A DNA stretch of 63,736 nucleotides, filler included, from Octopus bimaculoides (lineage: Eukaryota): the NCBI RefSeq assembly GCF_001194135.2. It is 6 parts of 5 records of this genome, joined end to end, with 100 filler letters (N's around TTAATTAATTAA, not from the genome) between each part and the next. Parts side by side here need not be neighbours in the genome. Positions count along the whole stretch, not along the records: positions 41,398 to 54,085 come from NC_068983.1; 5 more parts are not named here. The stretch is one strand, 5' to 3'. How positions within the stretch are numbered: the stretch's first letter is position 1; every line of letters starts with the position of its first letter. Positions 50,309-51,845 of the stretch are shown here, in pieces. The translations under genes and the position numbers were made by a program. The notes under the pieces were generated by a model. It saw only the letters and a program-made list of their open reading frames with translations. It did no database searches and was not told the DNA's origin.

Positions 50309-50657
50309 TGTAGTGACGTCATTTGGCGCCAAAATACAGTCGCCATTACTGCGTTTTCATCCACGCATGCGCAGGGAATAGTTCCGGAAGGAACACAGGA
50401 AGAGTCCCATGCGCATGCGTGGAATTCAACATCTAAAACGTTCCCGCTCTTTTCATTCTCTTTCTCGGCCGGCCGGCCATGAACATGGTCATGTCAAACT
50501 GTCTCTCCGACATTCCAACGTCTCAGCAACCATGCCTATTTCCTCAATAAATAAATATTGTTGTGTTGATAGTTCAAAGTCAGCGTTACGTTGTTTCTTT
50601 TGAATTTAATATAGGAAGGCGGGTGTACACCTAATGGTGTATAACTACTTTCCTATA
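50309..50657 (+). repeat. 5' LTR (349 bp)
   Basis: Matches 52462-52735 over its last 274 bp and is followed by a PBS. Confidence 0.75.
50314..50420. promoter_or_regulatory. CpG-rich transcription-factor motif cluster in the LTR
   Basis: TGACGTCA 50314-50321 (CRE), TTTGGCGCCAAA 50322-50333 (E2F-type palindrome), CGCCAT 50341, ACGCATGCGC 50363-50372 and GCGCATGCGT 50411-50420 (NRF1-type), CCGGAAG 50384-50390 (ETS-type). Confidence 0.5.
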
Positions 50658-50955
50658 ATTGGTGACCCCGAGTAAGAACAACGCAGCCCGGCACAAACCT
50701 ATAATTGGTGACCCTCCGACGTTGATTCAAACACGCAGCCAACGTGAACAGTTCACATAACCACTTTCCTATAATTGGTGACCCCGAGTAAGAACAACGC
50801 AGCCCGGGCACTTTCCGATAATTGGTGACCCCGAGTAAGAACAACCGCAGCCGATGATTCTGGTCTACCGACCAATAATACGACACTAGCCACCGCTTAC
50901 ATAAGTAAATACGGCATTTCGAACAGCTACCCGACGTGATGAACGACTGCAGCCG
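50649..50955 (+). repeat. Tandem array of LTR-end + tRNA-Trp-complementary PBS modules
   Basis: CC(T/G)ATAAT-TGGTGACCC occurs four times (PBS starts 50660, 50706, 50776, 50823). A partial CCCGACGTGAT lies at 50930-50940. Confidence 0.8.
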
Positions 50956-51845
50956 AAAATCTGAACTGCGACCAATAATACTACAATTGGTACCTCGAGC
51001 TAAAAGATCTACAGACCTCGTTTCAACAGCCATTGAATTCGTATGTTTCGCGACGTTCAACATCAGGATTGCCTCTACATTCTCATCAAACACAAGTGAA
51101 AAGCTAAGAAAATTTTTTCTACGATAAAGTTTTTCATTTTGTCAANNNNNNNNNNNNNNNNNNNNNNNNNNNNNNNNNNNNNNNNNNNNNNNNNNNNNNN
51201 NNNNNNNNNNNNNNNNNNNNNNNNNNNNNNNNNNNNNNNNNNNNNNNNNNNNNNNNNNNNNNNNNNNNNNNNNNNNNNNNNNNNNNNNNNNNNNNNNNNN
51301 NNNNNNNNNNNNNNNNNNNNNNNNNNNNNNNNNNNNNNNNNNNNNNNNNNNNNNNNNNNNNNNNNNNNNNNNNNNNNNNNNNNNNNNNNNNNNNNNNNNN
51401 NNNNNNNNNNNNNNNNNNNNNNNNNNNNNNNNNNNNNNNNNNNNNNNNNNNNNNNNNNNNNNNNNNNNNNNNNNNNNNNNNNNNNNNNNNNNNNNNNNNN
51501 NNNNNNNNNNNNNNNNNNNNNNNNNNNNNNNNNNNNNNNNNNNNNNNNNNNNNNNNNNNNNNNNNNNNNNNNTACCTTTTCAAACACCACACACCACTGT
51601 CAACATCATTACCACCACACATACAGAACACAGCCAGTTTACAGCGACGACATCAACAACCACGACGAACTACAAGCATCGCCCCCCGACGTCGCCATCA
51701 GCAATACGACTCAACGTACTACCAGCATCGTCAACATGATTTCTACACATACACAAGCAACCAACATCAACAAGCGCGGTTTTATCTCGACTCTGTTAGA
51801 GTGGATGTTTTCCACTCACGATCAACAGACCAGCTAGAATGTTCA

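What the first reader, a model, noticed from the sequence alone, without database searches (positions are those of the whole stretch)
50649..50960. Multimerised and extended tRNA-Trp primer-binding sites
The LTR-end/PBS junction is reiterated four times, plus a fifth partial copy. Each unit starts with TGG, the complement of the post-transcriptionally added CCA, so it derives from mature tRNA. The match runs beyond the usual 18 nt. Unit 2, TGGTGACCCTCCGACGTTGATTCAAACACGCAGCC, follows the reverse complement of eukaryotic tRNA-Trp as I recall it (TGGTGACCCCGACGTGATTCGAACACGCAACC) for ~33 nt. Unit 4 continues to TGATTCTGG, toward the anticodon arm. This implies RT read-through past the m1A58 stop, then iterative duplication. 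Possible functions are boosting priming for a parasite of an autonomous element, or acting as a tRNA/tRF sponge or decoy against tRF-mediated silencing. I know of no description of this arrangement in molluscs (not searched).
Basis: partly seen in the sequence, partly recalled or inferred. Interest (0 to 1): 0.8.

Follow-up and report, generated by a model that had tools for sequence, protein, structure and literature searches.

The report
Reiterated tRNA-Trp primer sites in retroelement
A small, apparently non-coding LTR retrotransposon carries, right after its left repeat, at least seven old and young copies of the short module "end of the repeat + binding site for tRNA-Trp", and the binding site keeps a decayed copy of about 32 bases of the tRNA instead of the usual 18; this is a curious variant of ordinary retroelement anatomy seen in one copy only, not a new kind of system.

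Summary
The 14-mer ATAATTGGTGACCC occurs exactly four times in 177 nt (50655-50831). It lies just downstream of a 5' LTR (about 50309-50657) whose partner ends at 52735 (97.1% identity over the 274 nt visible).

Each unit holds the last 9-17 nt of the LTR, the spacer AT, and a complement of the 3' end of tRNA-Trp. A fifth unit, truncated at its 5' end, lies at 50930-50954. Two strongly decayed units lie at 50869-50929 and 50969-51017.

I compared the units with a human tRNA-Trp antisense sequence printed in a paper:
- Three units match 12/12 from TGG.
- All five clear units align collinearly to positions 1-32. An anchored test of positions 19-32 gives p = 0.0005-0.003.
- The claimed continuation into the anticodon arm is not significant (p about 0.1).

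Old duplicates are about 70% identical and young ones 95-98%, so the array grew in several rounds. The old rounds predate this insertion.

Most likely this is a relic of primer-tRNA read-through, followed by repeated duplication of the LTR-end/primer-site junction.

No unit keeps more than 12 contiguous complementary bases. No relatives and no host tRNA could be retrieved, so the proposed priming-boost and decoy functions remain untested. Interest is moderate.

The parts
50305..50308 (+). Candidate target-site duplication, left copy (GGAG; GGAGT if 5 nt)
   Evidence: The same 4-5 nt follow the 3' LTR at 52736-52740. Tentative: GGAG occurs several times in the purine-rich tract upstream, and only GGAGT is unique there.
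50309..50657 (+). 5' LTR, about 349 nt. The start is inferred from the duplication and a TG start; the end is firm.
   Evidence: 50384-50657 matches 52462-52735 at 266/274. It contains TGACGTCA at 50314-50321, a 62-nt hairpin at 50361-50422, AATAAA twice at 50546-50555, and a terminal stem 50610-50619 / 50648-50657. The termini read TG...TA, not TG...CA.
50658..50659 (+). 2-nt spacer AT between the LTR end and the primer-binding site; it is repeated in every clear unit
   Evidence: Read directly from the sequence. A 2-nt spacer is the usual dinucleotide beyond the LTR end in linear retroelement DNA (general knowledge).
50660..50692 (+). Unit 1: the primer-binding site in the canonical position (12/12 complement of the tRNA-Trp 3' end), followed by a decayed tRNA complement to position 32 and a 4-nt tail
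   Evidence: 26 matches, 2 mismatches and 5 gap columns against positions 1-32. 0/500 shuffles reach the score. The 3' LTR ends cleanly with no unit attached, so this copy arose by priming here.
50693..50756 (+). Unit 2: about 9 nt of LTR end + AT + the best-preserved tRNA-Trp complement (50706-50740) + a 16-nt tail
   Evidence: 29 matches, 3 mismatches and 3 gap columns against positions 1-32. Anchored test of positions 19-32: p = 5e-4.
50757..50808 (+). Unit 3: 17 nt of LTR end + AT + a tRNA complement identical to that of unit 1
   Evidence: 50/51 identity to 50641-50691. Its LTR-end copy carries the base of the 3' LTR at the one site where the two LTR ends differ.
50809..50868 (+). Unit 4: 12 nt of LTR end (one change) + AT + tRNA complement (50823-50852) + tail GATGATTCTGGTCTAC
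   Evidence: 41/42 identity plus one indel to units 1 and 3. The tail's likeness to the anticodon arm is not significant (p about 0.1).
50869..50929 (+). Unit 5a: strongly decayed copy of the LTR-end + primer-site module
   Evidence: Not recognisable against unit 3 on its own. It is clearly homologous to unit 6: score 45 against a null maximum of 28.
50930..50968 (+). Unit 5b: tRNA-Trp complement lacking its first 7 nt (50930-50954), plus a tail
   Evidence: 22 matches, 1 mismatch and 4 gap columns against positions 8-32, with an 11-nt exact run. Anchored test p = 0.003.
50969..51017 (+). Unit 6: old, decayed module (LTR-end-like stretch + ...AATTGGTACCTCGAG...)
   Evidence: Score 32 against unit 3, with 0/3000 background windows reaching it. 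Together with 5b it forms the second copy of a roughly 100-nt higher-order repeat: 50830-50929 against 50930-51030, 72/104 columns, score 71 against a null maximum of 33.
51018..52461 (+). Rest of the internal region. It includes two assembly gaps (51146-51572 and 52245-52461) and a 120-nt tandem duplication (51835-52071). The second gap also hides the first ~74 nt of the 3' LTR.
   Evidence: No Pfam family and no homologues for the open stretches. TRF reports the 120-nt repeat at 89%. The polypurine tract and the start of the 3' LTR lie in the second gap.
52462..52735 (+). 3' LTR, visible part (its first ~74 nt are in the gap)
   Evidence: 97.1% identity to the 5' LTR, with 6 transitions and 2 transversions. 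It ends ...CCTATA, followed by GGAGT.
52736..52739 (+). Candidate target-site duplication, right copy

Best explanation
The region is the leader of a small LTR retrotransposon (about 50309-52735). The parts that can be read show no coding capacity.

Shown:
- Directly after the 5' LTR and a 2-nt spacer lies a primer-binding site complementary to the 3' end of mature tRNA-Trp. It starts with TGG, the complement of CCA, and matches 12/12.
- The sequence behind it is a decayed but collinear copy of the tRNA complement out to about tRNA position 45 (32 nt).
- The module [last 9-17 nt of U5 + AT + tRNA complement] is present at least seven times, with at least three different junction types and very different ages.

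Inferred:
1. The 32-nt stretch is a relic of a reverse-transcription cycle in which plus-strand synthesis did not stop at the modified A58 of the primer. It copied on into the T arm and variable loop, and the product was inherited.
2. The module was then duplicated repeatedly. Template switching or misaligned strand transfer between primer-site copies during reverse transcription is the most likely route.
3. The old copies (about 70% identical) arose long before this insertion, whose LTRs are 97% identical. The young ones (95-98%) arose at about the time of the insertion.
4. Only the LTR-proximal unit primed the cycle that made this copy, because the 3' LTR ends cleanly.
5. The extended complement is no longer maintained. 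The youngest units have lost most of the T-arm part, so today it is a fossil and not a working extended primer site.
For: LTR pair and flanks.

Exact reiteration.

tRNA identity: the human tRNA-Trp antisense template is printed in bioRxiv 10.1101/400127. Mouse tRNA-Trp-CCA 3' fragments are printed in PMC7555719. All five clear units align to positions 1-32, and 0/500 shuffles reach the scores. The best tRNA-Gly control score in the array is 13, against 37 for Trp.

Extension past 18 nt: the anchored test of positions 19-32 against about 6000 background 17-mers of the same piece gives p = 5e-4 (u2) and 0.003 (u1, u5b).

The units are not tRNA genes: ARAGORN finds none, and Rfam gives no tRNA match even at E <= 10.

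Several rounds of duplication:
- u1/u3 50/51 and u3/u4 41/42.
- u2/u5b 28/31 in aligned columns.
- u5a/u6 41/56.
- The ~100-nt higher-order repeat 72/104.
- Three junction types, carrying 12, 17 and about 19 nt of LTR-end-like sequence.

Background on the stop site: m1A58 stops plus-strand synthesis, m5Um54 acts as a second stop, and some lentiviruses keep complementarity up to position 54 (PMC8599865). Two primer sites on one RNA can both be used, according to the title of Voronin & Pathak 2004, seen only in the reference list of PMC3902901.
Against: - Only one copy of the element could be examined. No relative was found by DNA pattern or by protein probes.
- The host's own tRNA-Trp was not available. 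The reference is human/mouse, and the units differ from it at one shared column.
- Ordinary replication slippage or unequal exchange in the chromosome would give the same picture for the young units u1/u3/u4.
- The junctions carry short filler (CGG/CGGG) and no clear microhomology, so they do not point to a particular mechanism.
- The polypurine tract and the start of the 3' LTR lie in a gap. The LTR termini are TG...TA. The 4-nt duplication is weak evidence.
- Gap sizes are estimates, so some coding sequence could be hidden.
Confidence: 0.6

Rival explanations
1. The array, or at least its young part (u1, u3, u4), is an ordinary minisatellite. On this view it was made in the chromosome after insertion by replication slippage or unequal exchange, and it happens to span the LTR/primer-site boundary. 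Reverse transcription played no part in the duplication.
For: TRF sees a plain 47-nt tandem repeat at 95%. The piece is very rich in tandem repeats of all kinds. The element has another internal tandem duplication of 120 nt. The young units are about as diverged as the LTRs, so they could postdate insertion.
Against: The older units are about 70% identical against 97% for the LTRs, so they predate the insertion. At least three separate junction types all recapture the LTR end plus the primer site, which chance placement of slippage events does not readily give. Unit 3 keeps the base of the 3' LTR where the 5' LTR has changed.
Confidence: 0.2
2. The multimer is kept by selection. Either the several primer sites raise the chance that a non-coding element is primed in particles supplied by another element, or they soak up 3' tRNA fragments that would otherwise block the true site.
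For: Three units keep an identical 12-nt complement together with the LTR terminus and the 2-nt spacer, so each is a complete end-plus-primer-site module. Two primer sites on one RNA can both initiate (title cited). 3' tRNA fragments are reported to target primer sites (abstracts).
Against: No unit has more than 12 contiguous complementary bases, which is poor pairing for 18- or 22-nt fragments. The older units decay freely, to about 70% identity. This copy was primed from the first unit only. There are no expression, small-RNA or copy-number data.
Confidence: 0.1
3. The likeness beyond the first 12-18 nt is chance or convergent. On this view there is a normal short primer site and an unrelated leader that was duplicated.
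For: Free local alignment of the part beyond 18 nt is only marginal for single units (p = 0.02-0.14). Type-A units need 5-6 gap columns. The reference tRNA is not the host's.
Against: The anchored, collinear test gives p = 5e-4 to 0.003. Two separately diverged unit types (u2 and u5b against u1, u3 and u4) both keep the same order of matching blocks, ending in the same 8-mer.
Confidence: 0.07
4. Assembly artefact: the short-read assembler expanded or mis-joined a repeat in a scaffold full of gaps.
For: Three N gaps lie in or near the element. Repeats are a known source of misassembly.
Against: The array sits in 1.1 kb of uninterrupted sequence. The units differ from one another by diagnostic changes, and their periods (46, 70, 47 and about 100 nt) are shorter than typical reads.
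Confidence: 0.03

Closest known systems
Canonical tRNA primer-binding site of LTR retrotransposons and retroviruses, including tRNA-Trp-primed ones (general knowledge; a primer matching the tRNA-Trp complement is used against avian endogenous proviruses in PMC5029493)
   Same: The position is 2 nt after the 5' LTR. It starts with TGG, the complement of CCA, and is complementary to the 3' end of tRNA-Trp (12/12).
   Different: The site is present several times instead of once. Each copy carries its own copy of the LTR terminus. The perfect complement is 12 nt, not 18.
Complementarity extended to the second reverse-transcription stop (position 54) in lentiviruses; m1A58 as the plus-strand stop (PMC8599865)
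   Same: Complementarity to the primer tRNA continues beyond the 18 nt set by m1A58.
   Different: Here the trace runs much further, to about position 45, through the whole T arm. It is decayed and not conserved, which fits a fossil of read-through better than a maintained second stop.
Retroviral vectors built with two primer-binding sites (Voronin & Pathak 2004; only the title was seen, in the reference list of PMC3902901)
   Same: There is more than one primer site on one genomic RNA.
   Different: Those were engineered. This array is natural, multi-copy and of mixed age, and each unit includes the LTR terminus.
Non-autonomous LTR retrotransposons (TRIM / LARD types; bioRxiv 10.64898/2026.03.01.708851)
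   Same: Two LTRs and a tRNA-derived primer site, with no recognisable gag or pol in the readable part. The apparent size is about 2.4 kb.
   Different: That survey reports single primer-site motifs per family and no arrays. The size here depends on two estimated gaps.
Extended primer-template contacts of yeast Ty1/Ty3 with T and D arms of tRNAiMet, and the 'strong-stop DNA' origin proposed for tRNA-derived SINEs (from memory, not checked here)
   Same: The retroelement sequence is related to parts of the primer tRNA outside the 3' 18 nt.
   Different: In the Ty elements these are short, separate, conserved boxes. In the SINE model the tRNA is in sense orientation. Here there is one collinear antisense copy that is decaying.

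Membership tests
LTR retrotransposon | Two long direct terminal repeats | tested here: met
   266/274 identical over the visible part
LTR retrotransposon | Target-site duplication flanking the element | tested here: inconclusive
   GGAG(T) is present on both sides. However, the 5' boundary cannot be checked against the 3' LTR, whose start lies in a gap, and GGAG is frequent in the upstream purine-rich tract.
LTR retrotransposon | Primer-binding site complementary to a tRNA 3' end next to the 5' LTR | tested here: met
   12/12 to tRNA-Trp from CCA, 2 nt after the LTR
LTR retrotransposon | Polypurine tract before the 3' LTR | not testable with these tools
   The region lies in the N gap 52245-52461
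LTR retrotransposon | TG...CA termini | tested here: not met
   The termini read TG...TA. This is a common but not universal feature.
Autonomous LTR retrotransposon | gag and pol (protease, reverse transcriptase, RNase H, integrase) domains | tested here: not met
   No Pfam family above noise in any open stretch. There are 5-9 stops per + frame in the readable internal parts. The gaps total 644 nt.
Non-autonomous LTR element (TRIM/LARD-like) | Many dispersed copies that depend on another element | not testable with these tools
   The host genome is not in any searchable collection
Primer-tRNA read-through relic (extended primer site) | Collinear complement of the tRNA beyond nucleotide 18, starting from the CCA complement | tested here: met
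   Positions 19-32: p = 5e-4 to 0.003. Positions 33-46 are not significant.
Primer-tRNA read-through relic (extended primer site) | Match to the host's own tRNA-Trp | not testable with these tools
   Only human and mouse sequences from papers were available
tRNA gene or tRNA-derived SINE | Cloverleaf recognised by tRNA models | tested here: not met
   ARAGORN finds 0 genes. Rfam gives no tRNA match at E <= 10 on either strand.
Tandem repeat / minisatellite | Head-to-tail copies of one unit | tested here: met
   47-nt period at 95%, plus 116-nt and roughly 100-nt higher-order periods

The most novel reading that the evidence does not exclude
Each unit may be a self-contained 'LTR terminus + 2-nt spacer + primer site' module, so that reverse transcription could start at any unit and still yield DNA with a proper LTR end. 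The LTR boundary of the family would then slide by whole units, and the array would grow and shrink through reverse transcription itself. That would be a natural, heritable counterpart of the engineered two-primer-site vectors, seeded by a fixed read-through copy of the primer tRNA. The signature would be family members whose two LTRs both end in one or more extra units.
Probability: 0.15. Interest if true: 0.65.

Novelty: new variant of a known kind. Interest (0 to 1): 0.4.

Why it matters
If the reading is right, this locus is a natural fossil of two rare events in reverse transcription that are mostly known from cell-culture and in vitro work:
- copying of the primer tRNA past its modified stop base;
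- repeated re-use or duplication of the LTR-end/primer-site junction.

It would show that such products can be inherited and can build up over many cycles in a non-coding element.

It also gives a simple sequence signature to look for in other genomes: TGG-initiated tRNA complements longer than 18 nt, reiterated together with the LTR terminus.

It does not by itself show any function, and it rests on a single copy.

Tried and rejected
1. Looking for relatives:
- The metagenome scan with the 20-nt LTR/primer-site junction gave two hits. Both are chance matches inside bacterial genes.
- The viral-contig scan for two tRNA-Trp sites 20-50 nt apart gave nothing.
- Exact-product look-ups of two window ORFs gave nothing.
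- Protein searches with the antisense ORF across the array and with the internal open stretch gave nothing.

2. Identifying the host through the neighbouring LINE fragment: only lancelet proteins at about 50% identity came back. The host stays unknown and its tRNA-Trp could not be fetched.

3. A longer LTR or a tandem element: an apparent likeness between the 5' flank (49851-50106) and the internal region (52006-52235), score 23, is matched by other low-complexity windows of the piece. Rejected.

4. A tRNA gene or SINE in antisense: rejected. The units also start with the complement of the non-encoded CCA.

5. Continuation of units 4 and 5b into the anticodon arm and beyond: not significant (p = 0.07-0.15).

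6. A stable RNA fold of the leader: z = -0.32, so nothing special overall.

7. Literature: ten full-text searches found no description of reiterated LTR-end/primer-site modules. One search was wasted on the buffer meaning of 'PBS'. The Voronin & Pathak paper is not held. The search is not exhaustive.

It was replaced by stop counts and scans of the open stretches.
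Full report
**Scope.** Only 41398-54085 of the window is genome; the rest is N and linker. The finding lies in 1.1 kb of uninterrupted sequence (about 50000-51145), between assembly gaps at 47229-47574 and 51146-51572.

- The 14-mer ATAATTGGTGACCC occurs four times without mismatch, at 50655, 50701, 50771 and 50818, all on the + strand. 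The only other hit in the window has 3 mismatches.
- TRF reports a 47-nt period at 50762-50852 with 95% matches. The repeat finder reports the same units as families D16 and D18.

**What surrounds it.**
- A direct repeat of 274 nt (50384-50657 and 52462-52735) is 97.1% identical, with 6 transitions and 2 transversions. The second copy begins at the edge of an N gap, so it is longer than what can be seen.
- The right copy ends ...CCTATA and is followed by GGAGT.
- The same GGAGT lies at 50305-50309, followed by TGTAGTGACG or GTAGTGACG. This gives a tentative 5' LTR of about 349 nt (50309-50657) with a 4-5 nt target duplication.
- The duplication is weak evidence. GGAG is frequent in the purine-rich tract upstream, and the start of the 3' LTR is hidden.
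- In the + orientation the LTR carries TGACGTCA near its start, a 62-nt hairpin, and AATAAA twice about 100 nt before its end.
- Two bases (AT) separate the LTR end from TGG. This is the usual layout of an LTR retroelement read 5' to 3'.
- The readable internal parts (50658-51145 and 51573-52244) have 5-9 stops in every + frame. No Pfam family rises above noise, and the open stretches have no homologues.
- If the gap estimates (427 and 217 N) are roughly right, the element is about 2.4 kb and non-autonomous. This is an inference.

**Which tRNA?** I used no sequence from memory.
- A full-text search for the window's own TGGTGACCCCG found a paper that prints the antisense template of human tRNA-Trp chr17.trna39 with its CCA. 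Its anticodon was engineered (bioRxiv 10.1101/400127).
- A search for the reverse complement of the window's 12-mer found tables that assign it to mouse tRNA-Trp-CCA 3' fragments (PMC7555719).
- Units 1, 3 and 4 match this reference 12/12 from TGG.
- All five clear units align collinearly to positions 1-32 of the complement. Scores are 24-37, against shuffle means of 12-13 and maxima of at most 24; 0/500 shuffles reach the observed values.
- Counts of matches/mismatches/gap columns: u2 29/3/3; u1 and u3 26/2/5; u4 26/2/6; u5b 22/1/4 over positions 8-32.
- The tRNA-Gly template from the same paper scores 13 in the array. The best Trp score elsewhere in the piece is 21.
- The units are not tRNA genes: ARAGORN finds none, and Rfam gives no tRNA match at E <= 10 on either strand.
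- Because the units start with the complement of CCA, which eukaryotic tRNA genes do not encode, the source was mature tRNA (general knowledge).

**Does the match run past 18 nt?** Yes, to about position 32.
- In an anchored test, the 14 nt at positions 19-32 were aligned to the stretch that directly follows in each unit and compared with about 6000 background 17-mers from the same piece. This gives p = 5e-4 for u2 and 0.003 for u1 and u5b.
- Position 32 corresponds to about tRNA position 45. The copy therefore covers the acceptor 3' strand, the whole T arm and part of the variable loop.
- All five units carry the same base at the one variable-loop column where they differ from the human sequence. 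I predict this is the host's own tRNA sequence.
- The same test for positions 33-46 (anticodon arm) gives p about 0.1 for u4 and u5b, and 0.07-0.15 for the whole remainder.

**Anatomy of the array**. Every clear unit is [LTR terminus + AT + tRNA complement + short tail].
- The LTR-derived part is about 9 nt in u2, 17 nt in u3 and 12 nt in u4.
- There are two types of tRNA part. Type A (u1, u3, u4, and in decayed form u5a and u6) keeps the 12-nt core but has lost most of the T-arm stretch. Type B (u2, u5b) keeps the T-arm stretch better.
- Both types end in the same 8-mer ACGCAGCC (CTGCAGCC in u5b), so they are homologous.
- Young relationships: u1 and u3 share 50/51; u1 or u3 and u4 share 41/42 plus one indel.
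- Old relationships: u5a and u6 share 41/56. A roughly 100-nt higher-order repeat (50830-50929 against 50930-51030) shares 72/104 columns, with score 71 against a null maximum of 33.
- At least three junction types exist between the end of one unit and the LTR-like head of the next.
- The array thus grew in several rounds. Old copies are about 70% identical while the LTRs are 97% identical, so the old rounds predate this insertion and were carried by the RNA that made it.
- The young rounds are about as old as the insertion.
- Unit 3 keeps the base of the 3' LTR at the one site where the two LTR ends differ. It was therefore copied before the 5' LTR changed there.

**How it most likely arose and works.** The steps shown are the anatomy above. 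The following steps are inferred.
1. Plus-strand synthesis normally copies 18 nt of the primer and stops at m1A58. A second stop at position 54 is reflected in 22-nt complementarity in some lentiviruses, and synthesis beyond it gives DNA that no longer matches the other strand (PMC8599865). A 32-nt collinear antisense copy of the tRNA next to the LTR is what an inherited read-through product would look like.
2. Duplicates that always recapture the LTR terminus plus the primer site, with different breakpoints, fit template switching or misaligned strand transfer at this junction better than randomly placed slippage. For the young units slippage cannot be excluded. The element also has a 120-nt internal tandem duplication, so duplication is generally frequent in it.
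3. The 3' LTR ends cleanly, so unit 1 primed the cycle that made this copy.
4. The extension is not maintained. The youngest units have lost most of it, and no unit has more than 12 contiguous complementary bases.

**Function.** Nothing here tests function.
- Each of u1, u3 and u4 is a complete 'LTR end + spacer + 12-nt site' module, so priming from inner units is conceivable. It would yield copies whose LTRs are longer by whole units. This is the most novel reading that remains open, and a family survey can check it.
- The decoy idea is weakened by the short contiguous complementarity and by the free decay of the older units.

**Comparison with what is known.**
- The element passes the tests for an LTR retroelement on LTRs and primer site. 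It fails TG...CA (it has TG...TA). The polypurine tract and copy number cannot be tested. It shows no gag or pol.
- The nearest known matters are the canonical tRNA-Trp primer site, the 22-nt lentiviral complementarity, engineered two-primer-site vectors (only the title was seen), and non-autonomous LTR elements with single primer-site motifs.
- Ten literature searches found no description of reiterated LTR-end/primer-site modules. The search is not exhaustive.

**What failed.** No relative of the element and no host sequence could be retrieved. Whether the array is a family trait, and the host tRNA sequence, both remain open.

**Verdict.**
tRNA-Trp, the extension to about 32 nt and the iterative duplication hold. 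The anticodon-arm extension and the proposed functions do not.
- This is a new variant of a known kind, of moderate interest (0.4), resting on one copy.

Noticed in passing
window 50361-50422: There is a 62-nt hairpin with long perfect arms (CCACGCATGCGCA... / ...TGCGCATGCGTGG) inside the 5' LTR. Its right arm is also visible in the 3' LTR. It gave only weak, non-significant hits to miRNA models (E 0.45-1.6).
   Followed up: partly
window 50314-50321 and 50546-50555: A CRE-like palindrome TGACGTCA lies just inside the inferred LTR start. AATAAA occurs twice about 100 nt before the LTR end, and the corresponding stretch of the 3' LTR carries two substitutions.
   Followed up: no
window 50610-50619 / 50648-50657: The last 10 nt of the LTR can pair with a stretch 28 nt upstream, giving a 10-bp stem with one G-U just before the primer site. 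The right arm of this stem is the piece that is copied into every unit of the array.
   Followed up: partly
window 51835-52071: A 120-nt unit is duplicated in tandem (2.0 copies, 89% matches) inside the same element, near its 3' part.
   Followed up: no
window 45313-45366, 47053-47178, 48553-48678, 48756-48881; heads 47754-47812 and 48490-48548: Several copies of a dispersed, SINE-like repeat, 76-83% identical to one another. Each lies next to long (ATT)n or (ATC)n microsatellites.
   Followed up: no
window 44373-44747 (+): A 124-aa ORF looks like the C-terminal remnant of a LINE-type protein. The best named homologues are hypothetical proteins of Branchiostoma belcheri at 47-50% identity, and there is no Pfam family. 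It gave no clue to the host species.
   Followed up: partly
window 50189-50308: A 120-nt purine-rich tract lies directly upstream of the 5' LTR. It contains several GGAG, which weakens the 4-nt target-duplication call. It also resembles a polypurine tract, but no upstream element copy could be shown.
   Followed up: partly
window 41401-41726, 42144-42425, 43545-44013: Three blocks of simple or tandem repeats: a long (AGAA)n array, 28/46-nt tandem repeats, and a TA/TATG-rich block with extensive palindromic structure.
   Followed up: no
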